Part shown: piece after piece, positions 5,700 through 21,904 of the stretch
How the letters are laid out: each line of letters begins with the position of its first letter
How positions within the stretch are numbered: the first letter of the stretch is position 1
Virus record (IMG/VR): IMGVR_UViG_3300033153_013547
Span: 62,001-126,000 of that record
DNA: 64,000 nucleotides
Strand: one strand, 5' to 3'
Translations under genes and position numbers: made by a program
The notes under the pieces: model-generated
Databases searched by the model: none
The model's input: the letters and a program-made list of their open reading frames with translations, nothing else
Told to the model about the DNA's origin: nothing

Positions 5700-6248
5700 C
5701 TAAAGGCAGGAGATATCATGAGAACAACAAGGGAAACCGTGTTTTTCTTCGTCCATTAGTTCCAATTCACAAATATGCAACGAAAATTCGATGGCTTCGA
5801 CGCTTTTTTTACCTAATCCTCTGATGCCAAGGAGGTCTTCTTTGCTTTTATCAACAAGCCATTCCAAAGGGGGATAATCCAGATATTGTGGTGGGTGTTT
5901 GTTGCCATGTAATTCTTGCCAATGAGCTAATTTGAGGATTTTTTGAACATAAGGCTCTAGGCCCAACACATGTGTTGTTTGGTTCAGAATGAACCTCATG
6001 GCTTCTTTACCCAATTGATCAGCATGTTCTTTGGCTCTTTCTGGGGTAGGGTGTAATTGCCTACTTAGACCTCTATTGGGTCCTTTCAACGTATGGACAT
6101 ACATGTAATATTCGTTGTTGCCAAGGACTTTACCAATCTCTATTTCCATCACATGTCCATATTTTTTAGTTAGTGTCCCGTCAGCATGTTCGACCCATCT
6201 TGTGGTGCTGTTCATGACACTTTTTGTTTTGTTGTTGTGGTATTCCAT
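5700..6248 (-). CDS. protein with C-terminal RNA polymerase alpha-CTD-like HhH domain
   Basis: LVDKSKEDLLGIRGLGKKSVEAIEFSL resembles the alpha-CTD consensus LxxxxExdLLkixnLGrKSlxEIkexL. Confidence 0.65.
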   Translation of the reverse strand: MEYHNNKTKSVMNSTTRWVEHADGTLTKKYGHVMEIEIGKVLGNNEYYMYVHTLKGPNRGLSRQLHPTPERAKEHADQLGKEAMRFILNQTTHVLGLEPYVQKILKLAHWQELHGNKHPPQYLDYPPLEWLVDKSKEDLLGIRGLGKKSVEAIEFSLHICELELMDEEKHGFPCCSHDISCL

Positions 6249-11476: not shown

Positions 11477-11744
11477 CACATCCCGTGACATAGTCTTCAG
11501 GACGAACTGCGGCTTGGCCTAGCCCCGAGCGTTAGCGAGCCCAGGAGAAGAAATGGGAGAGGTCTGACTACCATTAAAATATAAAACATGTCAGACCTGA
11601 AGGGTTCCTATTTCTTCGGATGGGTGTAGGGCTAGGCCAAGGGAGAGCAGTTTGTCACAATGTATGTCACGGATGTGAGATCGTCTAAAGTTGCGCTAGT
11701 CTCCTTTCTTTTCAAATAAATAAGTGGCTAGCGCAACTTTAGAC
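11477..11744 (+). other. ~200-nt imperfect rod plus a 62-nt hairpin; structured ssDNA or ncRNA candidate
   Basis: Five nested stems at 11477-11677 and a 19-bp stem at 11683-11744; mismatches read as G-T on the + strand. Confidence 0.65.
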
Positions 11745-12051
11745 ACCTTATGGATGTCTTTTTGACTTAGAAAAGGCGGTCAGAAATAGAAGAACCTTTC
11801 TCTATCTCCCCCCACCTGGAGAATTGCAAAATTGTCAAAAAGCATCATTGTGTAAACTACAAGCAAGTAATGTGCTACTTATTCTTAGATTGTATCATAT
11901 TGTTCTTAGATTATGCCACATCCTGAACTCAAAGCAAAACAGGGGGCATAGACGTGTTGTATGTGCAGAAGGCGATGGTCTGCCGAAGGCAACACAATGT
12001 AATATTATCTATTAAAGTTGCCCTCAGCAGACCCATCAACATCAATCCAAG

Positions 12052-12222
12052 CTAATCACTTGGGAAAATGGGATACCGTGGATCATCCAGATCCTGGGGG
12101 GGGTCTTCCACTTCATAATGTGGACACCCATCACAATCTGGGCCTACGATATCCGTCAAGCCACACACCGACTCGTTGTCGGATAGGCTAAACCACAGAT
12201 GGACACAGGCCTCTTTTTCCAT
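12052..12222 (-). CDS. 56-aa acidic Cys-containing mini-protein, not in ORF track; last cassette of array
   Basis: AAGGAGG SD supplied by repeat R1; MEKEACVHLW...DDPRYPIFPSD. Confidence 0.7.
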   Translation of the reverse strand: MEKEACVHLWFSLSDNESVCGLTDIVGPDCDGCPHYEVEDPPQDLDDPRYPIFPSD

Positions 12223-12227
12223 CTCTT

Positions 12228-12307
12228 TCCTCCTTCAAGAAAGAATCACTATGCATTCATCATGGCACAATGTAGCTTCATGGCCACCAGCTACTCGGCC
12301 AAGCAGT
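12228..12307 (-). repeat. array repeat R1 (pseudoknot + P3 hairpin + SD)
   Basis: GGCCGAGTAGCTGGTGGCCATGAAGCTACATTGTGCCATGATGAATGCATAG...AAGGAGG. Confidence 0.9.
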
Positions 12308-12631
12308 TTAGTCACGAGGATCTATAACCCCTTCGATTTCATAGTCATCAACCTCTTCGATTTCACGGTCATTATTATAATCATACGAAACTTCATCGAT
12401 CCCCACCCTGAAGAGTGGGGATCCTCCACCACACGCGTCGAGGAACGCCATCTTTACCTGATGGGGATTTTGCCAATCATCATCAGGTTCGATGATCTTA
12501 ACCCCCCGTGTACTTGCAACAATACGGCCACCGATCTCATCAATGGCAAGAAACGCAGGCTTGCCATCATCGGTAACCGACATGAATGCCCCATATGTTA
12601 AATTGAAGTAGTTGTTAAAAAACAGATTCAT
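12308..12631 (-). CDS. acidic hypothetical protein ending DPRD
   Basis: 107 aa, between R2 and R1. Confidence 0.75.
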   Translation of the reverse strand: MNLFFNNYFNLTYGAFMSVTDDGKPAFLAIDEIGGRIVASTRGVKIIEPDDDWQNPHQVKMAFLDACGGGSPLFRVGIDEVSYDYNNDREIEEVDDYEIEGVIDPRD

Positions 12632-12731
12632 CTCTTCCTCCTTAGAAAGAAATCATCACACTTTCGTAGTGATCAAGTGATCGGATGATCACACGTAGCT
12701 TCATGGCCACCAGCTACTCGGCCACACAGCT
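12632..12731 (-). repeat. array repeat R2 (pseudoknot + alternative GTGATC hairpins + SD)
   Basis: Near-identical to R9; shares the pseudoknot with R1/R5/R7/R8. Confidence 0.9.
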
Positions 12732-12887
12732 TTAGTCACGAGGATCCAGATCCAACTCAGGATCCAGATCCAAGACATCAACATCAACCCCCCATCTGCA
12801 ATCTTGTTGATAAACAAGATCGCACTCTTCTCCCTCGGAAAGGAGGCAAGTTATGCCATCCTTCCCTAGGTATTTGCATTTTTTCAT
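12732..12887 (-). CDS. 51-aa acidic Cys-rich mini-protein ending DPRD (start revised)
   Basis: MKKCKYLGKDG...LDLDPRD; the longer ORF-track start reads through repeat R3. Confidence 0.7.
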   Translation of the reverse strand: MKKCKYLGKDGITCLLSEGEECDLVYQQDCRWGVDVDVLDLDPELDLDPRD

Positions 12888-12984
12888 TTTTCTTCTCCCT
12901 TGCCCCAAAGCACAACTCTTTGGGGCAAATCGCCATGCATTCATCATGGCACAATGCAGCCACAGTGCTAACGGCTGCTCAGCT
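12888..12984 (-). repeat. array repeat R3 (pseudoknot + P3 + P4 + SD)
   Basis: GCTGAGCAGCCGTTAGCACTGTGGCTGCATTGTGCCATGATGAATGCATGGCGATTTGCCCCAAAGAGTTGTGCTTTGGGGC. Confidence 0.9.
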
Positions 12985-12990
12985 AAAATG

Positions 12991-13956
12991 TTAAACAGGC
13001 ACAATCGAGTCGCTTCCTGCCTGCAACCTGCGCCTGTTTCCCAACACGATCCCCTCTTTCGTGTTGGCGTAGCAGTAACTGCAAAGGTGTGGGCAGGTGT
13101 TATATTGCCCGATGTCTTTGCTGGCAGCGCATCCGCAGATGCGCCGCTGCCCTGAATCTTTCAGTCCGGCTGGAGTGCCGAAAAGTTTCAGCAGTGCCGG
13201 ATCATTATTTGAGATTCGGAGCAACAGCTCGTCATCGATACATTTGTTTGGCTCGATGCTTGGTTGCTGAAGATCGAGCGGCTCGGCGCAAGTCGCCAAT
13301 TTTAGCCCCCATTGCTGATTCAATCTTACCAAACCTGAAGCTGTCTCACGCATTAAAAATGGTGTGAAATCGAGCCATTTGACGCCCTTTGCCTTTAGGT
13401 TGTTTCGGACTTTACCATAAGCGTCCATATAACTGAAAACCAACTTTTCCGTATATGGATGCAATTGGTCGCCCACTCGTTTAACCTTTTCGAGAAGTCG
13501 CTCAACATTGAGCTCTTCTGTTAAGATTAGAGGATCGAAACGCCAAATCACTCTATGCTTGCCAAGACGGTTGGACAACTCTTGGAATGATTGAATGCGC
13601 GACTCCAGAGGCGGCACATTCGGTTCCAACGCGCCGCCATGGTCTGCGACATAGTCGTTGACCGTGAACTGGAAATAGTAGGCGACGCCTACTTGATCCA
13701 GCTTTTTAAGGTGTTTCATCAAGGGTTTTGGATTCTTACTCCAAAAAACGATGGCGCGCATACGCTCAAAGGAAACAAACTGGGATTTCCCATTAAAAGG
13801 ATTAACCCAGCGTGAATAGCCTTCTTCGAGTCGTCGCATAAACCAATCAGAATAAAAGGCTGGAATATCGGTAGATCGACTAGCCGATATAACTTCCGGC
13901 GCCACAGCCGTATGCACTCCACTGGATGTGGAGATTTCAGTTCTTTTCCACCTCAT
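12991..13956 (-). CDS. DUF1848 family protein (radical-SAM-like, C-terminal Cys cluster)
   Basis: ISASRSTDIPAFYSDWF, FWSKNP, WRFDP, CGCAASKDIGQYNTCPHLCSYCYAN. Confidence 0.88.
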   Translation of the reverse strand: MRWKRTEISTSSGVHTAVAPEVISASRSTDIPAFYSDWFMRRLEEGYSRWVNPFNGKSQFVSFERMRAIVFWSKNPKPLMKHLKKLDQVGVAYYFQFTVNDYVADHGGALEPNVPPLESRIQSFQELSNRLGKHRVIWRFDPLILTEELNVERLLEKVKRVGDQLHPYTEKLVFSYMDAYGKVRNNLKAKGVKWLDFTPFLMRETASGLVRLNQQWGLKLATCAEPLDLQQPSIEPNKCIDDELLLRISNNDPALLKLFGTPAGLKDSGQRRICGCAASKDIGQYNTCPHLCSYCYANTKEGIVLGNRRRLQAGSDSIVPV

Positions 13957-14050
13957 CTACTCTCCCTACCCCAAAGCACAACTCTTTGGGGCAAATCGCC
14001 ATGCATTCATCATGGCACAATGCAACTTCATTGCTATCAGTTGCTCAGCT
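13957..14050 (-). repeat. array repeat R4
   Basis: Same architecture; S2 stem variant GCAACT/AGTTGC. Confidence 0.9.
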
Positions 14051-14057
14051 AATTAAT

Positions 14058-14582
14058 TCACCAATTCTGTTGAACAAACGCCACAATGGCGTCAAAGGTG
14101 TTTAGATCAACATCTTTGACGCCATTGTTGCCAATGATGGTCAACGGAATCCCCAGGCCAAGGGCAATCCTTATCCCCTGGCCTGTACCACCAAGGCCCC
14201 GTTTGTTAGACGGAGCAGCAATTACAGAATCACAACCAAAAATGATTCTGTAATTCCTTCCGTGCAACTTCCTTGCCCCCATAGACAAATATCCTGGGGC
14301 AGGATGATATTTGTCAACGGAAGCAAAGGCCGCCTGGTCGCTCATGGACAAAACATGAACGACCTTGCAAAGGCCCTGGATTTGAGAATTGTACGACGGC
14401 CACGGCACATGACCTTCAGTACTTATTCCCAAATTTCTGGCATGCTCGATGGCAACTTTGTCAATACCATCAGCGCAGCCAGAGACAACTACAGACCCTT
14501 TATCAAGAGATTCTACAATCTCTCTGACAATGCGGATCTGGGGACCAGAGGGGTCTCTGGTCCCTATCACAGCAATCTTCAT
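14058..14582 (-). CDS. SLOG superfamily (DprA/Smf-like) nucleotide-binding protein
   Basis: IAVIGTR, VVSGCADGID, GGTGQGIRIALGLGIP. Confidence 0.75.
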   Translation of the reverse strand: MKIAVIGTRDPSGPQIRIVREIVESLDKGSVVVSGCADGIDKVAIEHARNLGISTEGHVPWPSYNSQIQGLCKVVHVLSMSDQAAFASVDKYHPAPGYLSMGARKLHGRNYRIIFGCDSVIAAPSNKRGLGGTGQGIRIALGLGIPLTIIGNNGVKDVDLNTFDAIVAFVQQNW

Positions 14583-14666
14583 TCCTTTTCTCCTTCAAAA
14601 AAGAATCGCCATGCATTCATCATGGCACAATGTAGCTTCATGGCCATCAGCTACTCGGCCAGGCAG
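14583..14666 (-). repeat. array repeat R5 (no P4)
   Basis: Close match to R1. Confidence 0.9.
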
Positions 14667-14673
14667 ACAATTG

Positions 14674-14934
14674 TTAATGAACAATCACTCCATCTTTCAC
14701 CCTTCTTAGGGCAAAGATGAAGTCATCGCCTTGCATATAGACGATGACCTTTACATCCGAGGTGTCGAAACACTCTATACTGGTCTCGACAAATTTTAAG
14801 GGATCGTTAAGGTACGCATCAGCGTCATTAACATCCAGCACCCATGTGCCGGTTATCGGGAGCCTAAACGCCTCCCGAATGATAACATGTGATCCCGGAC
14901 TTGCCGGGATCGTGGGGTATATAATTCTCCTCAT
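14674..14934 (-). CDS. hypothetical protein (start revised to MRRIIYP)
   Basis: AAGGAG SD of R6. Confidence 0.65.
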   Translation of the reverse strand: MRRIIYPTIPASPGSHVIIREAFRLPITGTWVLDVNDADAYLNDPLKFVETSIECFDTSDVKVIVYMQGDDFIFALRRVKDGVIVH

Positions 14935-14940
14935 CCCCAT

Positions 14941-15032
14941 CTCCTTTGCCCCAAAGCACAACTCTTTGGGGTAAAATCGCCATGTATTCATCATGGCACA
15001 ATGTAGCCTTATGACTATCGGCTGCTCAGTCA
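14941..15032 (-). repeat. array repeat R6
   Basis: S1 variant GACTG/TAGTC. Confidence 0.9.
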
Positions 15033-15039
15033 AGAGAAC

Positions 15040-15423
15040 TTAGGCAGAATCTCTGATCTTCATCAGGATCCTGCCCAGATGGTTCAGTCCAACTCCGTTG
15101 CTTACGCCCCAGAATTGGTCTCCCCACCAATTCTCTTCAACGATCTCCCCCTTTATGGCCTGAAGTTTGGCCATAAAGACAGGATCGCTGAACTTTTTAC
15201 TTACCAGATCCTCCATGATCTGGAGTTTGACCTGATCCCAGTCAGGCCTAAGCCTAACTGTTTTGCCAATCTTTTTGGCAATAAACCCGTTGGTCACACC
15301 AACGAATCTTGCCTGATCAGCAGGATCAGTACACTTTGCCTTCTGGTACTCCACCTCCACACAGTACCCTAACGAATTAGGACACATGTTGGACAGAAAC
15401 CAGAAGATGCCCCTGAATCTCAT
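15040..15423 (-). CDS. NADAR (YbiA-like) ADP-ribose/N-glycosidase
   Basis: FLSN, VEYQKAK, RPDWDQVKLQIM, KF, IVEENWWGDQFWG, GLNHLGRILMKIR; AAGGAGG SD. Confidence 0.9.
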   Translation of the reverse strand: MRFRGIFWFLSNMCPNSLGYCVEVEYQKAKCTDPADQARFVGVTNGFIAKKIGKTVRLRPDWDQVKLQIMEDLVSKKFSDPVFMAKLQAIKGEIVEENWWGDQFWGVSNGVGLNHLGRILMKIRDSA

Positions 15424-15433
15424 AATCACCTCC

Positions 15434-15847
15434 TTAGTGATATATCTCAACATTCAGATCAAGATCAGCCAGTTTATCAGACATCATCTGCCTAACCACT
15501 GGCCAATCCAGACCTCCAAGGCCACATCCAAGCCTGGGGAAGGCTATGGACCTAAAACTCCAGGTTTGGGTGGCAAAATCATCAAGACCATCAGAGATAT
15601 ACTCCAATTTGCTTGGATCTCTCCAATGATCCTTGGTGGGGAACAGTAGAACATTCTCCACCAAGATGACCTTGCCAGGCCTTAGAATGCCTGCAGAGCA
15701 TAGCCTGGCATACTCTGCAAACACCATGGGAAACCTTGCTTTGAACTCCAAGGCAAGACCCTTGCCCATCACGCCAACACAGTTGACGGGATTGACAAGA
15801 ACCTCACATTTGGAATCAAACAGATCCCCCCGCAGCAACAACAACAT
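15434..15847 (-). CDS. macrodomain ADP-ribosylhydrolase (DarG/Poa1/TARG1-like class)
   Basis: GDLF, VNPVNCVGVMGKGLALEFK, FPTKDHW, SIAFPRLGCGLGGLDW. Confidence 0.9.
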   Translation of the reverse strand: MLLLLRGDLFDSKCEVLVNPVNCVGVMGKGLALEFKARFPMVFAEYARLCSAGILRPGKVILVENVLLFPTKDHWRDPSKLEYISDGLDDFATQTWSFRSIAFPRLGCGLGGLDWPVVRQMMSDKLADLDLNVEIYH

Positions 15848-15951
15848 CTCCTCCTCCTTTACCCCAAAGCACAACTCTTTGGGGTAAAATCGCCATGTAT
15901 TCATCATGGCACAATGTAGCTTCATGGCCACCAGCTACTCGGCCAAGCAGT
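15848..15951 (-). repeat. array repeat R7
   Basis: GGCCG-type pseudoknot + P3 + P4. Confidence 0.9.
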
Positions 15952-16155
15952 TTAATCACGAGGATATCTGATGACATCATTCATGGTATCATGGTCAATA
16001 TCAGCAGATATCGTCTTGATTGCTTCCAACTTGATGAAAGCGCACAGAAGTCCCCGCACTTCTTCGATTTCATCAAATAAAATCTTGCTCCGATGAAAGA
16101 GCAAGACTATCGTCACCACAAGGGCGGCGATAATAATCGACATTAATAACAACAT
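15952..16155 (-). CDS. 67-aa membrane-anchored protein ending YPRD (start revised)
   Basis: MLLLMSIIIAALVVTIVLLF hydrophobic N-term; SD from R8. Confidence 0.7.
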   Translation of the reverse strand: MLLLMSIIIAALVVTIVLLFHRSKILFDEIEEVRGLLCAFIKLEAIKTISADIDHDTMNDVIRYPRD

Positions 16156-16258
16156 CTCCTCCTCCTTTACCCCAAAGCACAACTCTTTGGAGCAAAATCG
16201 CCATGTATTCATCATGGCACAATGCAGCTTCATGGCCACCAGCTACTCGGCCAAGCAG
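16156..16258 (-). repeat. array repeat R8
   Basis: Near-identical to R7. Confidence 0.9.
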
Positions 16259-16561
16259 TTACTTCTTCTGCTTTTCAACCCATTCCTTTATCACGTCTCC
16301 GTGACAAGGGCTGGGTTTGCAAAAGCAGACAAGGGTCTTCCCATCAAGTTCAAGCACCCTCCTCTTGAACTCGGGGTCAGACCCCAATCTGCTCAGGAAG
16401 TACTCCCTATACTTAGGTAGGGAGCTACCCCCTGAGCCGGGGAATGGATTCCCAAAATATCCATCCATTCCCCTACCAGCCCTTCCTATGTAAACATAGG
16501 AAGGGTCATCGCGCCACCCCTTAGGGGCGTCGCGAATATTAATAACGTTGATAGGCAACAA
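16259..16561 (-). CDS. DUF4326 family protein
   Basis: YVYIGR...FGNPF...LDGKTLVCFCKPSPCHGDVI; AAGGAGG SD favours TTG at 16561 (ORF track start 16594). Confidence 0.85.
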   Translation of the reverse strand: MLPINVINIRDAPKGWRDDPSYVYIGRAGRGMDGYFGNPFPGSGGSSLPKYREYFLSRLGSDPEFKRRVLELDGKTLVCFCKPSPCHGDVIKEWVEKQKK

Positions 16562-16629
16562 AATCACCTCCTTTTGTTGCCGGTCAATCGACACGGTTTC
16601 GGCAGACCACGTGTCATTCTGCAGACAAA

Positions 16630-17070
16630 TTACATGAAATCTCCCACAATCAGGTCACCCTTCTTGTGGGAGATTTTCTTCCCCCTTGGTCGGGGCGCAG
16701 GCACCTTCTTGGCGGGCACCTTCTTGGCAGGTGCCTTAACCTCTCTGGGCCACTTGCAATAATGCTTGACTGGCCCAGAGGCAGGCCGCTCTGCTGTTGC
16801 TGCCACCACTTCCACAGCAACAGCCTTTTTCACAGTAGGCCCAACCACATCATGGATGAGCCTACTGCAACACAGCTGCTTCCTGAGACGAAGTATTGCC
16901 TCGCCTCCGTCCACGCCTGTGGGGATCGTGCCCCTCCAACCGGGAACACGTTCCCCGTTGAGGTAGGCTTCACAGTACTGAAGCCCACCCCTTTCAAACA
17001 GGGGGGAGAATTTAATCTTTACCCTCTTCCCCCCCAACAAAATGTCAGGGGGACGAATCAAATTAGGCAC
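16630..17070 (-). CDS. hypothetical protein with basic PAKK tail
   Basis: AAGGAG SD, GTG start; KAPAKKVPAKKVPAP repeat. Confidence 0.65.
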   Translation of the reverse strand: MPNLIRPPDILLGGKRVKIKFSPLFERGGLQYCEAYLNGERVPGWRGTIPTGVDGGEAILRLRKQLCCSRLIHDVVGPTVKKAVAVEVVAATAERPASGPVKHYCKWPREVKAPAKKVPAKKVPAPRPRGKKISHKKGDLIVGDFM

Positions 17071-17143
17071 AGTAACACACTCCTTTCTGCCAGGTATATC
17101 CTGGATCAGATGAGCAGTTTATTGTCTTGCTCAGGACACAATG

Positions 17144-17464
17144 TTATAAACCAAGTTCCTCCCTGACACGATCCCTATTGACGGGATAAATGTTTATCTC
17201 ATCTATCCCATCAATAGAAACCCTGAACAATTGCCAGGGGCCCCCATCTGCTGGGATGAACCAGTATAGAGGATTATACCCCTTGGCTTCCTCAAACTCC
17301 TTCGCTGCTCTTCCGAACAGCGAATTCTTCCGGGGATTTTGTTGCCAAACTTCTCCCCAAATCTGCCCTATTGGCTTGGCAGATTTGAGCATCACCCCAG
17401 AAATGGTGGCTCTTGGTGCGGAGCAGACCGCCTTACGCACCAAGGCAATAATTTTCTCTTCCAT
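17144..17464 (-). CDS. hypothetical protein
   Basis: SD from R9. Confidence 0.75.
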   Translation of the reverse strand: MEEKIIALVRKAVCSAPRATISGVMLKSAKPIGQIWGEVWQQNPRKNSLFGRAAKEFEEAKGYNPLYWFIPADGGPWQLFRVSIDGIDEINIYPVNRDRVREELGL

Positions 17465-17562
17465 TTTTCCTCCTTAGAAAGAAATCATCACACTTTCGTA
17501 GTGATCAAGTGATCGGATGATCACGCGTAGCTTCATGGCCATCAGCTACTCGGCCATACAGT
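17465..17562 (-). repeat. array repeat R9 (R2 type)
   Basis: Near-identical to 12632-12731. Confidence 0.9.
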
Positions 17563-17645
17563 TTAGTCACGAGGGTCCAGAATGTCACCATGGCTTGTTG
17601 TCAGCCAGAAATGGCTTTCAACCCATAGACCAATGCCCCAACTGA

Positions 17646-18611
17646 CTAAATTCCCCGTGCCCAGAGAGCGTTCCGGCGCGCTTCTTTTTCGGCGCGCGCC
17701 TTTTCAACTCGTTCGCGAAGCTCCGGGGGAACATAGCCCGGCGTGTCGGGCGGTTCCGTAGCAGACACCGTAAATGTCTGCAGGAAAACGCTCGCGTACT
17801 CTTCCACCTGTTCGAGGGACAGCTCGACCCCCGAACGCAGCTCTTTGGGCAACTGGTAATCCAGATCAACTTCCACCACTCTCTCGGCGTGAACCGCGAT
17901 GTGTGGCGGGAGGCTGCCTTGCGTGGTATAAACGTCCTTCCCCATCACGTCATCCACTGCGGCATTCTCCACGACTGGCGTTCCCTTTGTCACCAGTCCT
18001 ATTTTCTCCAGATACGTCACGAACGCCGGATGGCGCGTGACGATGATGTTCCCATTTTCCATGGGAACAATATCCGACGCCCTGAGCAAATCTGACGCGA
18101 TGAAAGAGTACGCCTTGAGCTCACCGCTCGCGTACTCTTCCACCTGTTCAAGGGTCAGTTCGACCCCAGAACGCAGTTCATCGGGTAAATCGAGCGTGAG
18201 CTCGATTAACTTTTCTGAATACACCGCCAAGTGCAGGGGAATATACCCCTGCGTGGTGTAAACAGACCTTAAGGGACCGAGAGGTATCCCCGTCATGTCA
18301 TGACGGCTCCGCACATTCTTGAGCCACGTCACACGCCGTGCGCTGCCGAATGTGTGGATCTTCGCAAAATAACGCGCCACTGCGAGGTGGCGCGAAACGA
18401 CAAGATCTTTCGGCGGATAAATCTCCACTAGTCGGACAACGCGCGACTCGCCCTCCTCCAGGTAATTCCCGTAGGAATCCTGGACGGAACCCGAGGCTAT
18501 CGTCGTTCGATAGCCGTGCTCGATATCTATGGGGCCGCACCGGCGACCCTTGAAGTCCCTGATTTTCTCAAGCCTAGCCTCATTCCAGGCTTGAAACTCC
18601 TTCTCATTCAT
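17646..18611 (-). CDS. tandem two-domain Csx16-like (Cas_VVA1548) putative ring nuclease
   Basis: Two repeats of VV(S/T)RH...G(Y/S)(I/L)PxH(L/I)A...LPxELRSGVEL(T/S)LEQVEEYA. Confidence 0.7.
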   Translation of the reverse strand: MNEKEFQAWNEARLEKIRDFKGRRCGPIDIEHGYRTTIASGSVQDSYGNYLEEGESRVVRLVEIYPPKDLVVSRHLAVARYFAKIHTFGSARRVTWLKNVRSRHDMTGIPLGPLRSVYTTQGYIPLHLAVYSEKLIELTLDLPDELRSGVELTLEQVEEYASGELKAYSFIASDLLRASDIVPMENGNIIVTRHPAFVTYLEKIGLVTKGTPVVENAAVDDVMGKDVYTTQGSLPPHIAVHAERVVEVDLDYQLPKELRSGVELSLEQVEEYASVFLQTFTVSATEPPDTPGYVPPELRERVEKARAEKEARRNALWARGI

Positions 18612-18668
18612 ATCAATCTCTCCTTGCCCTGCACTAGCCGCGGCAGGGCTTCGCGGTTGTGTGTTACC

Positions 18669-18953
18669 CTATGCAAACTGCACGATGTACGCCACGGGCG
18701 TGCTGGCGTATTCGCGCACTTGCTCAAGGGTCAGCTCGACCCCCCTCATCTCCGCCGGAATATCCAGCGGAACTTCGATCACTCGCCGCGCATGCACGGC
18801 GAGCCGAAGAGGAAGAACGCCGAAAACGTTCTTCCCCATTACATCGTCGACCGTGGCATGTGCCACGATGGGCGTGCCTTCCGGCACTAACCCTATCTCG
18901 ATCAAATACGTCACCAATGCTGGGTGACGCGTAACAACAATACTTTTATTCAT
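18669..18953 (-). CDS. csx16: Csx16-like (Cas_VVA1548) putative cOA ring nuclease, 94 aa (start revised)
   Basis: IVVTRHPA...GVLPLRLA...LDIPAEMRGVELTLEQV fits the Csx16 pattern hhsRHpgA...GtLPxhLA...LdlPxexRGxELs. Confidence 0.75.
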   Translation of the reverse strand: MNKSIVVTRHPALVTYLIEIGLVPEGTPIVAHATVDDVMGKNVFGVLPLRLAVHARRVIEVPLDIPAEMRGVELTLEQVREYASTPVAYIVQFA

Positions 18954-19048
18954 CTCTTCTCCTTTACCCCAAAGCACAACTCTTTGGGGCAAATCGCCAT
19001 GTATTCATCATGGCACAATGCAGCCACAGTGCTGTCGGCTACTCAGCT
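18954..19048 (-). repeat. array repeat R10
   Basis: Same architecture as R3. Confidence 0.9.
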
Positions 19049-19086
19049 GTGGGGGGCGATCCTGTTTCGATGTTGACAGGATCCAT

Positions 19087-19117
19087 AAAAAAAGAGAGAG
19101 GCCCGAAGGCCCCTCTC
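19087..19117 (-). terminator. rho-independent terminator (copy 1)
   Basis: GAGAGGGGCC-TTCG-GGCCTCTCTC + T7. Confidence 0.85.
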
Positions 19118-19120
19118 CGA

Positions 19121-19210
19121 TGATGCCTATATTTCTCCTTTCCCGGCATCAGGGAGTTTCACCACTATGCAGGTGACGCATACATTTTGTTTATCCAGAT
19201 GTAAACTGGA
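19121..19210 (-). ncRNA. candidate structured RNA, three tandem H-type pseudoknots (copy 1)
   Basis: TCCAG/CTGGA + TACAT/ATGTA; TGC/GCA + TCACC/GGTGA; TCCC/GGGA + TGATGCC/GGCATCA; covaries with copy 2. Confidence 0.55.
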
Positions 19211-19234
19211 ATCCGGTTTTGAAAGGGGAGGGGG

Positions 19235-19690
19235 TTACTCTATTATTGGGAGGACATCCCCTTCTTCAAAGTCATACTGCCACGGATCATAATCCGTGGC
19301 AAGACCAATTGCTGTGACCATGTCTTTTGCGACGATCACAGCAAACCCCTGAAATTCCTCGCCCCCATCGTAGGGGACGAGGAACCCCCCGGGTTCCTTT
19401 TCTTCCGGACACTCCGGAAGGTTGGGGGCAAGTTTTCTTGCCCCCAACTGAAGGGTCCTCCAGACGGAGGTTTTTACTCCGTCTAGAAACCCTGACTCCC
19501 CACGTAAAATGGGGTAAAACACGCTAGTCGCTGCAGCGGCCAGCGTGCTCGCTCCTCCGGCTCTCATGAGCCGGAAGTACGAAATATTGCCGCTAACAGC
19601 AACTGGGCACCACGTCCTGTGGAGGGGCAGACACTGCCCATACCCCTCCACAGGGCGTAAAAAGACCGATAGCCAAAAAATTTTAGCCAT
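19235..19690 (-). CDS. hypothetical protein, paralog of 19972..20442 (start revised)
   Basis: MAKIFWLSV...FRLMRAGGA...LVPYDGGE. Confidence 0.75.
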   Translation of the reverse strand: MAKIFWLSVFLRPVEGYGQCLPLHRTWCPVAVSGNISYFRLMRAGGASTLAAAATSVFYPILRGESGFLDGVKTSVWRTLQLGARKLAPNLPECPEEKEPGGFLVPYDGGEEFQGFAVIVAKDMVTAIGLATDYDPWQYDFEEGDVLPIIE

Positions 19691-19696
19691 TCCCAT

Positions 19697-19787
19697 CTCC
19701 CTTACCCCAAAGCACAACTCTTTGGGGTAAAATCGCCATGTATTCATCATGGCACAATGCAACCACAGTGCTAACGGCTGCTCAGCT
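19697..19787 (-). repeat. array repeat R11
   Basis: Same architecture as R3. Confidence 0.9.
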
Positions 19788-19825
19788 GTGGGGGGCGATC
19801 CTGTCTCGATGTTGACAGGATCCAT

Positions 19826-19857
19826 AAAAAAAAGAGAGAGGCCCGAAGGCCTCTCTC
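19826..19857 (-). terminator. rho-independent terminator (copy 2)
   Basis: GAGAGAGGCC-TTCG-GGCCTCTCTC + T8. Confidence 0.85.
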
Positions 19858-19860
19858 CGG

Positions 19861-19952
19861 TGATACCTATATTTCTCCTTTCCCGGTATCAGGGAGTTTC
19901 ACCACTATGCAGGTGACGCATACATTTTGTTTATCCAGATGTAAAAACTGGA
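19861..19952 (-). ncRNA. candidate structured RNA, three tandem pseudoknots (copy 2)
   Basis: TGATACC/GGTATCA compensatory change; a 2-nt insertion falls in a loop. Confidence 0.55.
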
Positions 19953-19971
19953 ATCCGATTTTGAAAAGGGG

Positions 19972-20442
19972 TTACCCTATTATCGGGATAATATCCCGAT
20001 AATCCGTAGCAAAGTCGTCTCGCCACAGATCGTAATCTATGGCGAGATCAATCGCCGTGGTCGCATTTTTTGCGACTACGACGACAAACCCCTCGAATTC
20101 GCCCCCATCGTAGGGGACGAGCACTTTGCAGAATACCCCGGAACGTTCCGGGATATCGGGGGCAAGCAAAGCTACCCCCACCTGCATTGTTCTCCGGACA
20201 AATGTTACCCACTTGTCTAGAGAATTTACCTCGCTCAAGAGCCAATCCGCATTTGTTAAAATGGGATAAAATATACTAGCCACTATAGCGGTTAGTATAT
20301 CCGCTCCTCCGGCTCTCATGAGCCGGAAGTGCGAAACGCCGTCGCTTTCAGCGACGACGTTCCATGACTCATTATCGGGGGGGTTTTCTTTAAACCCCTC
20401 GATCTTGTCGAGTAAAACTGACAGCCAAAAGATCTTGGCCAT
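19972..20442 (-). CDS. hypothetical protein, paralog of 19235..19690 (start revised)
   Basis: Shared motifs; SD from R12. Confidence 0.75.
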   Translation of the reverse strand: MAKIFWLSVLLDKIEGFKENPPDNESWNVVAESDGVSHFRLMRAGGADILTAIVASIFYPILTNADWLLSEVNSLDKWVTFVRRTMQVGVALLAPDIPERSGVFCKVLVPYDGGEFEGFVVVVAKNATTAIDLAIDYDLWRDDFATDYRDIIPIIG

Positions 20443-20537
20443 CTCCTCCTCCTTTGCCCCAAAGCACAACTCTTTGGGGCAAATCGCCATGTATTCATCA
20501 TGGCACAATGCAACTTCATTGCTATCAGTTGCTCAGC
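20443..20537 (-). repeat. array repeat R12
   Basis: R4-type pseudoknot + P3 + P4 + AAGGAGGAGG. Confidence 0.9.
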
Positions 20538-20628
20538 GTCATATCGCAGATTTCCTAACCGGTGTCTGCCAACCGGCCACAGCCAAAATAGTGACTGTGG
20601 CCACCGCCTACGTTGCGGAGGCGGTGGT

Positions 20629-20835
20629 TTAAAACCCCCGAGCCTCAAGGTCGAGGCATATGTCTTCGTATGCCTCGACCTTGAGCTCGTCAGCAAGGGA
20701 ATCTAAATAACTCCCTTGCTGAACGTTGAGGCGTTCTACCTTGCGGCAGAACGCCTCAACAAGCTCAAGGCGACGATAAGGATTCTTGCAATCCTTAATC
20801 GCCTCCTTGAGCTTAAACAACTCAAGAAATCTCAT
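20629..20835 (-). CDS. 68-aa hypothetical protein, first gene of array (start revised)
   Basis: AAGGAGG SD before MRFLELF. Confidence 0.7.
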   Translation of the reverse strand: MRFLELFKLKEAIKDCKNPYRRLELVEAFCRKVERLNVQQGSYLDSLADELKVEAYEDICLDLEARGF

Positions 20836-21342
20836 AAACACCTCCTTCAACGACATAGGGCATCTATTTATACCCCTCTTTGGCCCTATCACAGAATTGT
20901 GTCCATCTTCGACCAGATGGAAGAATTACTCCCTTAGGCCATATAGTTTGGGGGTGGGCATCATCTGATAACTCCACCCCTAAACTATCATTCTGGTCAG
21001 CCCCCCAAAATTCATCACAGAATTGCCTTATAAACAGACAAAAAAATTGCCTCATGAACAAACAACATTCTTCATAGCTAGCTAGATAAAAACTAACTTT
21101 CAGTCAGTCTTCCAAAATTCACAAATTTACTCCTTCATTGAATGATCCATATACTATAAAAACTTTTTCTCAAACAACTTCTCAAAAAATATATGCAGTA
21201 ATAATTCCCATGTAAGGGCTAAAATAAAATCTCTCTCTGGCCTCCAAAATAAAATAATTATTATCTAATAAGGTAGTATAGATGGGTAGATGGGTAGATA
21301 TCCTGCCTTATTTACTAAAATAGGATTTACTTTTAATTAATT

Positions 21343-21696
21343 ATGCCACAAACACGTGAAGAACGTATTTCTAACTATGCTGATGTGTCTGTAAGAGTAG
21401 CTGTGAAATACCACATAGATGAAGAGTTGTTGGACTTAGATAGTAATAATAAATATGACCAGAGGTATATGGAAGGGCAGATGTGCTACAAGGAACAAGA
21501 ACTGTTTTTTGAATATAAAATAGAACAGGCTGCCAGGAAAACACTCTGTAAGCTATTTATACAGACTTTAACTGAAATAAAACGTATTATGTATGACTCT
21601 ACTGATCACAGGACTTTTGAATACCTGCAGACAATGAAGGATGTTGCAGAAAAACACCCTATAATAGCAGAATATTTAGAGAGCCATGAATCTTAG
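21343..21696 (+). CDS. hypothetical protein
   Basis: First gene after the strand switch. Confidence 0.7.
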   Translation: MPQTREERISNYADVSVRVAVKYHIDEELLDLDSNNKYDQRYMEGQMCYKEQELFFEYKIEQAARKTLCKLFIQTLTEIKRIMYDSTDHRTFEYLQTMKDVAEKHPIIAEYLESHES

Positions 21697-21904
21697 AGAA
21701 AAACTTGCAACATTAGAACACAAACAATGGGCACACTGGACCAAGTATATGTTGGCCAACCTTACTGATGAAAATATATCCAGGTGGAAACGTCAGATTG
21801 ATACGTCTTATGACCAATTAAGTGAACAGGAGAAAGATAGTGATAGGGAGTGGGCAGATAAAGTGCTTGAATTATTGCAAGACGAATTAGACAGTATTAT
21901 TTAG
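21686..21904 (+). CDS. small RyR-domain-like protein
   Basis: LATLEHKQWAHW...YDQLSEQEKDSDR resembles the RyR repeat. Confidence 0.6.
   Translation: MNLREKLATLEHKQWAHWTKYMLANLTDENISRWKRQIDTSYDQLSEQEKDSDREWADKVLELLQDELDSII

What the first reader, a model, noticed from the sequence alone, without database searches (positions are those of the whole stretch)
12308..17580. Unrelated cassettes share a C-terminal (D/Y)PRD-stop, including an orphan copy
Seen: + strand TTARTCACGAGGRT abuts R1, R2, R7 and R9. It encodes IDPRD* (12308), LDPRD* (12732) and RYPRD* (15952). At 17563-17580 it encodes LDPRD* in a frame with no start codon, ~65 nt past the true stop (17646) of the Csx16 fusion. Two genes also both start MLLL after R7/R8. 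Inference: the repeat unit extends into coding ends, marking crossover points, and the orphan is a scar of a cassette replaced by incoming Csx16 DNA. A shared peptide tag (degron or targeting signal) is an alternative.
Basis: partly seen in the sequence, partly recalled or inferred. Interest (0 to 1): 0.62.

Follow-up and report, generated by a model that had tools for sequence, protein, structure and literature searches.

The report
Repeat edge gives genes shared tail
In a 261-kb phage, the intergenic repeat that separates small accessory genes sometimes reaches 14-19 bases into the preceding gene, so three unrelated genes end in the same PRD-stop; this looks like a by-product of recombination between repeats, a process already described in T4-type phages.

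Summary
TTARTCACGAGGRT occurs four times in the window, and its 8-mer core occurs four times in the whole 261-kb phage genome, always at the gene-proximal edge of one repeat subtype. Three copies encode (D/Y)PRD-stop on three mutually unrelated ORFan proteins. The fourth lies 65 nt past the native stop of the Csx16 fusion, in a frame with no ATG, GTG or TTG.

The setting is a 9-kb, GC-rich array of 12 units plus one decayed unit, in a jumbo phage. All genes are on the minus strand, and the cargo looks like counter-defence (DarG-like Macro, NADAR, SLOG, Csx16).

The units are mosaics of modules: a tail, a covarying hairpin or pseudoknot, a conserved core hairpin, an optional 5' hairpin and a Shine-Dalgarno site. 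Their edges are ragged on both sides. The phage has a RecA/UvsX-like gene but no integrase, and the integron core sites are absent.

Best reading (about 0.6): the tail is a DNA-level extension of a PeSL-like, recombination-prone intergenic unit. Genes joined upstream of it in frame inherit its last codons and its TAA. The orphan is the same piece left untranslated.

A peptide tag is not excluded, because no homologues exist to test it. This is a new variant of a known kind, of moderate interest.

The parts
12308..12322 (-). Tail copy 1. It forms the last 4 codons plus TAA of the 107-aa ORFan (IDPRD*) and abuts unit R1.
12732..12750 (-). Tail copy 2. It forms the last codons plus TAA of the 51-aa ORFan (LDPRD*) and abuts unit R2. 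It shares 19 nt with copy 4, and a GATCCA-type hexamer repeat overlaps it.
15952..15965 (-). Tail copy 3. It forms the end of the 68-aa membrane-like ORFan (RYPRD*) and abuts unit R7.
17563..17581 (-). Orphan tail copy 4, abutting unit R9. It is untranslated by any ORF with a canonical start.
17582..17645 (-). Spacer of about 65 nt between the native stop of the Csx16 fusion and the orphan tail. Its origin is unknown.
17646..18611 (-). 321-aa gene with two Csx16 (Cas_VVA1548) domains. Together with the 93-aa Csx16 gene at 18669-18950 it forms one imported two-gene cassette.
12223..12307 (-). Unit R1: type-1 hairpin, core hairpin, SD; no 5' hairpin.
12632..12731 (-). Unit R2: type-1 hairpin, variant GATC-rich core, SD. 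It is 96% identical to R9.
15851..15951 (-). Unit R7: type-1 hairpin, core hairpin, 5' hairpin, SD. Its homology with R8 runs into the first codons (MLLL).
16159..16258 (-). Unit R8: type 1 without the tail. Its homology starts at the TAA of the DUF4326 gene.
17465..17562 (-). Unit R9: type-1 hairpin, variant core, SD.
11900..20590 (-). The whole cassette array. It holds units R1-R12 plus a decayed terminal unit (about 11900-12050). Every gene called as cassette cargo is on the minus strand. GC is 46-55% in a 38% GC genome.

Best explanation
The window comes from a 261-kb phage with direct terminal repeats. Between about 11.9 and 20.6 kb it carries an array of small accessory genes, all on the minus strand. 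The genes are separated by a 95-125-nt intergenic unit.

Read in the gene direction, a unit runs from the upstream stop codon to the next start. It holds, in order:
- hairpin 1, in two covarying types, with a possible pseudoknot;
- a conserved core with a second hairpin, flanked by weak -35-like and -10-like hexamers;
- an optional third hairpin;
- AAGGAGG and the start codon.

The units are mosaics and their edges are ragged. One lineage of type-1 units carries 14-19 extra bases on its upstream edge, with the core CCTCGTGAYTAA. I take this to be DNA that travels with the unit during duplication, gene conversion and gene replacement.

Shown: three unrelated genes carry the same four terminal codons and the same TAA as this unit edge, and at R9 the same piece lies untranslated 65 nt past the Csx16 fusion's own stop.
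Inferred: those genes were joined in frame just upstream of the piece and so inherited it; and the R9 copy is what remains where an incoming gene brought its own stop.

The likely motor is homologous recombination between units, using the phage's RecA/UvsX-like recombinase. Short-homology or illegitimate joins would form the gene-unit junctions. This is the process described for PeSL cassettes of T4-type phages.

Shown: the anatomy, the mosaicism, the DNA-level identity, the untranslated copy, and the foreign origin of the Csx16 DNA.
Inferred: the recombination mechanism, the promoter or attenuator role of the unit, and the neutrality of the peptide.
For: - Specificity of the motif.
- The tail is tied to the type-1 unit only (4 of 6), and it occurs with both core variants.
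- The module combinations tail+/hairpin3-, tail+/hairpin3+, tail-/hairpin3- and tail-/hairpin3+ all exist. This four-gamete pattern shows exchange inside the units.
- Ragged 5' edges among type-1 units. Homology starts about 5 nt (R5), 9 nt (R8) or 22-28 nt (tail copies) before the hairpin.
- Ragged 3' edges. R7/R8 identity runs into the first codons.
- R2 and R9 are 96% identical over 116 nt, including 19 nt of tail.
- The orphan frame has no start codon.
- Two clustered SNPs in R2 in another sample both match states seen in other units, which looks like gene conversion.
- The R10-R12 cassettes are tandem duplicates.
- A RecA-like gene is present; tyrosine recombinase, serine recombinase and Y1 transposase are absent.
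- The 5' junction of the imported Csx16 cassette lies at the SD, a GGAG microhomology with the donor-type sequence.
- PeSL precedent. Those units run from the stop codon to the SD and start, carry stem-loops, sit in hyperplastic regions next to ORFans, and recombine: PMC2839356, PMC4122927.
Against: - The retained piece is of nearly constant length (14, 15, 15 and 19 nt). Random illegitimate joins would be expected to vary more.
- All three translated copies use the same frame. Frame 2 would also stop inside the tail, at TGA.
- Of the three substitutions in the tails, two are synonymous third-position changes.
- No recombinant, circle or relative with a different cassette order was found. The only other copies of the array are identical or near-identical.
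- No sigma-70-type promoter was called inside the units by the consensus scan.
Confidence: 0.6

Rival explanations
1. The tail is a selected C-terminal peptide, (D/Y)PRD-COOH on an acidic tail, acting as a degron, a targeting signal or a docking motif shared by small early proteins.
For: - All three translated copies are in the same frame.
- Two of the three nucleotide differences are synonymous (GAT/GAC).
- The 20 residues before each tail are acid-rich. Two proteins have V-I just before the tail, encoded by different codons.
- The last gene of the array ends PSD* and contains DLDDPRYP.
Against: - One copy sits in a frame without a start codon, yet is as well kept as the others.
- The shared element is a DNA string that continues without a break into the non-coding unit, and it occurs only with one unit subtype.
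- The PSD* resemblance is not significant: 9 of 947 other ORF ends do as well.
- Too few substitutions exist for any dN/dS statement.
- There are no homologues with which to test conservation.
Confidence: 0.13
2. The tail is the defined end of a site-specific or transposon-like element: an attC-like site or a MITE-like unit with CCTC...GAGG ends. That element supplies the stop codon, and cassettes move as circles.
For: - The boundary is narrow, 14-19 nt.
- The stop codon lies inside the unit, comparable to integron recombination sites, whose core site can supply an in-phase stop codon (PMC8876359).
- The hairpins show compensatory changes.
- The Csx16 pair is circularly permuted relative to its prophage homologues.
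- attC clusters without an integrase are known in virulent phages (PMC9892861).
Against: - The phage has no tyrosine recombinase, serine recombinase or Y1 transposase.
- No RYYYAAC/GTTRRRY pair flanks the units on either strand.
- The units fold as two or three separate hairpins, not one long imperfect hairpin.
- R5 and R8 are type-1 units without the tail, and the unit includes the SD of the next gene.
- The end complementarity is only 4-5 bp, and any SD would give it.
Confidence: 0.12
3. The tail works in the mRNA. Its CCUC pairs with the GGAGG of the next gene (an anti-SD clamp), or it sets the context of a stop codon placed 7 nt before a pseudoknot, so coupling termination to expression of the next gene.
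For: - The minimum-free-energy folds of R7 and R9 close the whole unit with a CCUC/GAGG helix.
- The stop codon lies 6-8 nt before the covarying hairpin or pseudoknot in 7 of 8 compact cassettes.
Against: - Only 4 of 12 units have the tail.
- The folds of R1 and R2 do not use the pairing.
- The helix is 4-5 bp across about 90 nt.
- Read-through of the stop would add only 3-9 codons.
- No Rfam family matches.
Confidence: 0.08

Closest known systems
PeSL (promoter-early stem-loop) regulatory cassettes in hyperplastic regions of T4-type phages (Arbiol et al. 2010, PMC2839356; Comeau et al. 2014, PMC4122927)
   Same: - A repeated intergenic unit that runs from the upstream stop codon to the SD and start of the next gene.
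- It contains stem-loops.
- It is concentrated between small ORFan or accessory genes of a large lytic phage.
- The units are mosaic, and they are associated with duplication and replacement of the genes between them.
- A phage recombinase is present.
   Different: - There is no sequence similarity to published PeSLs.
- No consensus sigma-70 promoter was detected, only weak TTGTGC-17-GATTTT.
- The unit is longer, with up to three hairpins, one possibly a pseudoknot.
- The 12 copies form one array rather than about 50 copies spread through the genome.
- The repeat reaches into coding ends and gives unrelated proteins a common C-terminus. I did not find this described in the sections of those papers that I read.
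- Mini-circles were not testable.
Integron attC sites and attC clusters lacking an integrase (CALINs), including those reported in virulent phages (Qi et al. 2023, PMC9892861)
   Same: - A one-directional array of short, unrelated, often foreign cassettes separated by structured repeats.
- The repeat lies next to or over the stop codon.
- There is no integrase in the phage, as in a CALIN.
   Different: - There are no R''/R' core sites.
- The fold is not a single imperfect hairpin.
- The repeat includes the next gene's SD.
- The boundaries are ragged.
- The units are far more alike in sequence than typical mobile attC sites.
Conserved regulatory sequences upstream of early anti-defence genes in archaeal viruses (Bhoobalan-Chitty et al. 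2024, PMC11065993)
   Same: The same regulatory sequence is repeated in front of many small viral genes, several of which here look like counter-defence genes (DarG-like Macro, NADAR, Csx16).
   Different: Those motifs are promoters used for gene discovery. The abstract says nothing of them driving cassette exchange or extending into coding ends. The hosts and the sequences are unrelated.

Membership tests
PeSL-like phage regulatory cassette | Lies between small non-essential or ORFan genes in a variable region of a large phage | tested here: met
   The array has 46-55% GC in a 38% GC genome. Its cargo is ORFans and accessory domains.
PeSL-like phage regulatory cassette | The unit spans from the upstream stop codon to the SD and start of the downstream gene | tested here: met
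   Alignment of the 12 units. For the PeSL definition.
PeSL-like phage regulatory cassette | Stable stem-loop inside the unit | tested here: met
   Folds. In hairpin 1, 98.6% of cells are paired and 3 of 6 pairs show compensatory changes.
PeSL-like phage regulatory cassette | Strong sigma-70-like early promoter in the unit | tested here: inconclusive
   The consensus scan places no promoter in the unit cores. By eye, both core variants have TTG(T/A)(G/T)C, then 16-17 nt containing the hairpin, then GATTT. The host and its sigma factor are unknown.
PeSL-like phage regulatory cassette | The stem-loop acts as a terminator or attenuator | tested here: inconclusive
   The core hairpin followed by ATTTT or ATTCTTTTTT is listed as terminator-like in R5 and R8 only.
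PeSL-like phage regulatory cassette | Recombination between units produces indels, replacements and mini-circles | tested here: inconclusive
   Mosaic modules, tandem duplicate cassettes and a gene-conversion-like SNP pair point that way. No variant arrangement or circle was found.
Integron attC / CALIN | Integron integrase (tyrosine recombinase) next to the array | tested here: not met
   PF00589 finds nothing in the complete 261-kb genome, while all 14 control genomes are positive. A CALIN would lack it as well.
Integron attC / CALIN | Inverted core sites RYYYAAC and GTTRRRY at the two ends of each repeat | tested here: not met
   A regex scan of both strands finds no pair coinciding with the units. 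Only R3 has a perfect RYYYAAC at its stop codon.
Integron attC / CALIN | A single imperfect hairpin with extrahelical bases | tested here: not met
   The units fold into two or three separate short hairpins.
Integron attC / CALIN | Score above threshold with the attC covariance model (IntegronFinder or HattCI) | not testable with these tools
   The model is not on hand. Rfam has no hit in the array.
C-terminal peptide tag or degron | The motif is conserved in homologues irrespective of the flanking DNA | not testable with these tools
   The 107-aa and 68-aa proteins have no homologues in 5.8 billion clusters by word search. The 107-aa protein has none in 1.84 billion representatives by HMMER.

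The most novel reading that the evidence does not exclude
The unit is a mobile element with a defined end at the tail. It supplies a ready-made stop codon and moves gene cassettes through circular intermediates in a jumbo phage, without any recognisable integrase. That would be an integron-like capture system run by an unknown phage or host enzyme. The constant 14-19-nt boundary and the circularly permuted Csx16 pair would be its footprints.
Probability: 0.1. Interest if true: 0.78.

Novelty: new variant of a known kind. Interest (0 to 1): 0.42.

Why it matters
It shows at base-pair resolution how a large phage assembles and re-sorts an island of imported genes that look like counter-defence genes. 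The structured intergenic unit is the currency of exchange. Its edge can overwrite the ends of genes, giving unrelated proteins the same C-terminus and leaving untranslated ghost codons.

For annotators, a shared terminal peptide in such arrays need not mean a shared function.

For phage biology, the array is a compact case of repeat-mediated shuffling outside the T4 group. Its unit could be used as a search handle for accessory genes once relatives are sequenced.

Tried and rejected
- **Chance:** rejected.
- **Relatives of the repeat:** exact-pattern scans of IMG/VR with three repeat motifs, and of the JGI metagenomes with one, gave only unrelated single hits.
- **Relatives of the phage:** the flanking 919-aa and 404-aa proteins have no relatives in IMG/VR. 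The array DNA has no match in GenBank phages or in plasmids.
- **Other copies of the array:** these are a 100% identical 10-kb contig from a sister sample and a near-identical 591-bp contig. No alternative cassette order could be seen.
- **Homologues of the tail proteins:** none found. The two hits at E about 1e-3 cover 30-50 residues of much longer proteins and were not pursued.
- **Origin of the 65-nt spacer:**
  - There is no significant similarity to the other tail genes.
  - A local alignment to an internal part of the prophage Csx16 gene reached only p about 0.06. A DNA profile of five Csx16 copies found nothing. The idea that the spacer is a decayed Csx16 fragment is therefore dropped.
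- **Fifth tail at the last gene (PSD*):** not significant.
- **Loci with Macro-domain homologues in two other phages (L013, L014):** they show only short promoter- or RBS-like repeats, not this unit.
- **Rfam:** no family matches in the array.
- **Tail as a -10 element:** the -35-like hexamers upstream lie in unique sequence and are inconsistent between copies (and inspection).
- **Plus-strand ORFs that start in the units:** they have no SD and run antisense to genes with Pfam domains, so I treat them as spurious.
Full report
**Observation**

The 14-mer TTARTCACGAGGRT, allowing one mismatch, is found exactly four times in the window, at 12308, 12732, 15952 and 17563. The chance expectation is 0.07. 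Its 8-mer core occurs four times in the complete genome, at these sites only.

On the minus strand, three copies form the last codons and the TAA of three genes:
- 12308-12631, 107 aa, ending IDPRD*
- 12732-12887, 51 aa, ending LDPRD*
- 15952-16158, 68 aa, ending RYPRD*

These are the only 3 of 950 ORFs of 40 aa or more in the genome that end in PRD. The three proteins show no similarity to each other.

The fourth copy (17563-17581) reads ...DILDPRD*. Its frame is open for 46 codons but contains no ATG, GTG or TTG. It lies 65 nt after the stop of the 321-aa gene 17646-18611, which carries Csx16 (Cas_VVA1548) domains.

The MLLL starts after R7 and R8 are also real.

**Setting**

The window is bases 62001-126000 of a 261,124-bp virus record with direct terminal repeats, rated complete. 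The genome has 38% GC.

From about 11.9 to 20.6 kb, GC rises to 46-55%. All called genes there are on the minus strand and are separated by a repeat.

I count 12 units (R1-R12), plus a decayed one downstream of the last gene. None occurs elsewhere in the genome.

The cargo is:
- DUF1848
- a SLOG/DprA-like protein
- NADAR together with a Macro domain that matches the DarG macrodomain at E 3e-50
- DUF4326
- Csx16 genes
- two paralogous 151-aa and 157-aa genes
- several ORFans

This looks like an island of imported counter-defence genes beside a divergent AT-rich control region.

**Anatomy of the unit, read in the gene direction**

After the upstream stop codon comes hairpin 1. It exists in two sequence types that keep pairing through compensatory changes: 3 of its 6 pairs change on both sides, and 98.6% of cells are paired. 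A second helix would make it a pseudoknot: 2 of its 4 pairs change on both sides, and 91.5% of cells are paired.

Next comes a core that is identical over 18 nt in ten units. It contains a second hairpin. In R2 and R9 this core is replaced by a different, GATC-rich pair of hairpins.

Eight units then have a third, perfect 8-bp hairpin. All units end with AAGGAGG and the start codon.

No Rfam family matches.

By eye, both core variants have a TTG-type hexamer, then 16-17 nt holding the hairpin, then GATTT. The consensus scan does not call a promoter there. It lists the core hairpin as terminator-like in only two units. The regulatory role is therefore inferred, not shown.

**The tail belongs to the unit**

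- It occurs only next to type-1 units (R1, R2, R7, R9). R5 and R8 are type 1 without it.
- It occurs with both core variants, and with and without the third hairpin. All four combinations of tail and third hairpin exist, which requires exchange inside units.
- The upstream edge of homology differs among type-1 units. It starts about 5 nt before the hairpin in R5, at the TAA in R8, and 14-19 nt into the coding region in the four tail copies.
- At the other edge, R7 and R8 remain alike into the first codons.
- R2 and R9 are 96% identical over 116 nt, and that stretch includes 19 nt of tail.
- A 591-bp contig from another sample differs from the window in R2 by two adjacent SNPs, and both SNP states are found in other units. 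This looks like conversion between units.
- The R10-R12 cassettes are tandem duplicates.

These are the marks of repeats that recombine with each other and with their surroundings.

**Enzymes**

The genome has a RecA/UvsX-like gene (E 3.5e-24, above the family cut-off). It has no tyrosine recombinase, serine recombinase, Y1 transposase, RecT or ERF.

No RYYYAAC/GTTRRRY pair flanks the units on either strand. The units fold as separate short hairpins. Integron-type attC membership is therefore not met on the features I could test. The attC covariance model itself was not available.

**The orphan and the Csx16 DNA**

The 321-aa protein has one real homologue. It is 68% identical, also 321 aa long and also ends ...GI*. 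The stop at 17646 is therefore native.

The homologue lies in a prophage-like region of a bacterial MAG, next to a serine recombinase and an HTH repressor, and is followed after 20 nt by a 94-aa Csx16 gene.

Both genes align to the phage cassette at 74-77% DNA identity, but in the phage the small gene comes first. The module is foreign to the phage and circularly permuted. Its 5' junction with unit R10 lies at the SD, where the donor-type and unit sequences share GGAG.

The 65-nt spacer before the orphan tail matches nothing I could find.

It does not prove that a gene was replaced there.

**Peptide or DNA?**

The word search finds only the genes themselves. A full HMMER pass over 1.84 billion representatives finds no credible relative of the 107-aa protein.

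In favour of a peptide:
- The frame is the same in all three translated copies.
- Two of the three substitutions are synonymous.
- The context is acidic.
- There is a weak echo (PSD*, DLDDPRYP) in the last gene. That echo is not significant.

In favour of DNA:
- There is an untranslated copy.
- The tail is linked to one unit subtype.
- Identity continues unbroken into non-coding sequence.

I put the DNA by-product reading at about 0.6. The rivals are the peptide tag at about 0.13, a defined-end or site-specific element at about 0.12, and an RNA pairing role at about 0.08.

**Comparison with what is known**

The closest described system is the PeSL cassettes of T4-type phages. These are units that run from the stop codon to the SD and start, carry a stem-loop and an early promoter, crowd hyperplastic regions next to ORFans, and mediate indels, replacements and mini-circles by recombination (PMC2839356, PMC4122927).

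The present unit shares the layout and the context. It has its own sequence, more structure, no proven promoter, and a clear spill-over into coding ends.

Clusters of attC sites in virulent phages are also known (PMC9892861), but this unit does not have their defining features.

**Limits**

No relatives with other cassette orders were found.

Noticed in passing
window 17646-18963 (minus strand); L010 9954-11260: The Csx16 pair (93-aa gene, then the 321-aa fusion) is 74-77% identical in DNA to a pair in a prophage-like region of a bacterial MAG. There the order is reversed (321 aa, then 94 aa), so the module is circularly permuted. A circular or tandem intermediate could explain this.
   Followed up: partly
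window 15040-15850 (minus strand): One cassette holds two overlapping genes: a NADAR protein and a Macro domain that matches the DarG ADP-ribosyl glycohydrolase domain (E 3e-50). It is a likely counter to DarT-type DNA ADP-ribosylation. Other cargo is SLOG/DprA-like, DUF1848, DUF4326 and Csx16.
   Followed up: partly
window, hairpin 1 of each unit (for example 12273-12302, 12957-12986): Hairpin 1 keeps pairing through compensatory changes between unit types. A second helix (GGCC/GGCC, AGCT/AGC, GACT/AGTC) would make it an H-type pseudoknot. In 7 of 8 compact cassettes the stop codon lies 6-8 nt upstream of it.
   Followed up: partly
window 12326-12372 and 12743-12772: Short tandem repeats (24 nt x 2; a GATCCA-type hexamer x 5) lie immediately upstream of, or overlapping, two of the tails. 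They encode acidic low-complexity C-termini.
   Followed up: no
window about 11900-12051: A decayed thirteenth unit lies downstream of the last array gene. It keeps GCTGAG...CAACT and CATTGTG at the right spacing, and a different short hairpin. It marks the far end of the array.
   Followed up: partly
window 18951-20590: The cassettes after R10-R12 are tandem duplicates with periods of about 740-750 nt. They carry paralogous 151-aa and 157-aa genes. Two of these cassettes have a conserved 3' non-coding block of about 120 nt with a strong intrinsic-terminator-like hairpin (19093-19118, 19833-19858).
   Followed up: no
L008 (equals window 11631-21755) and L006: In a sister sample the array assembles as a separate 10,125-bp contig. 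It is 100% identical to the window and breaks 0.4-1.2 kb outside the array. A 591-bp contig from an unrelated ENA sample carries R2, the 107-aa gene and R1 with three differences.
   Followed up: partly
window 5700-6248 (minus strand): A 182-aa protein has a weak match to the C-terminal domain of the RNA polymerase alpha subunit (E 4e-4, below the cut-off). It could be a transcription-related early protein.
   Followed up: no
genome 246326-247093 (outside the window): A RecA/UvsX-like recombinase gene (401-aa open frame). No tyrosine or serine recombinase and no Y1 transposase was found in the whole phage genome.
   Followed up: yes
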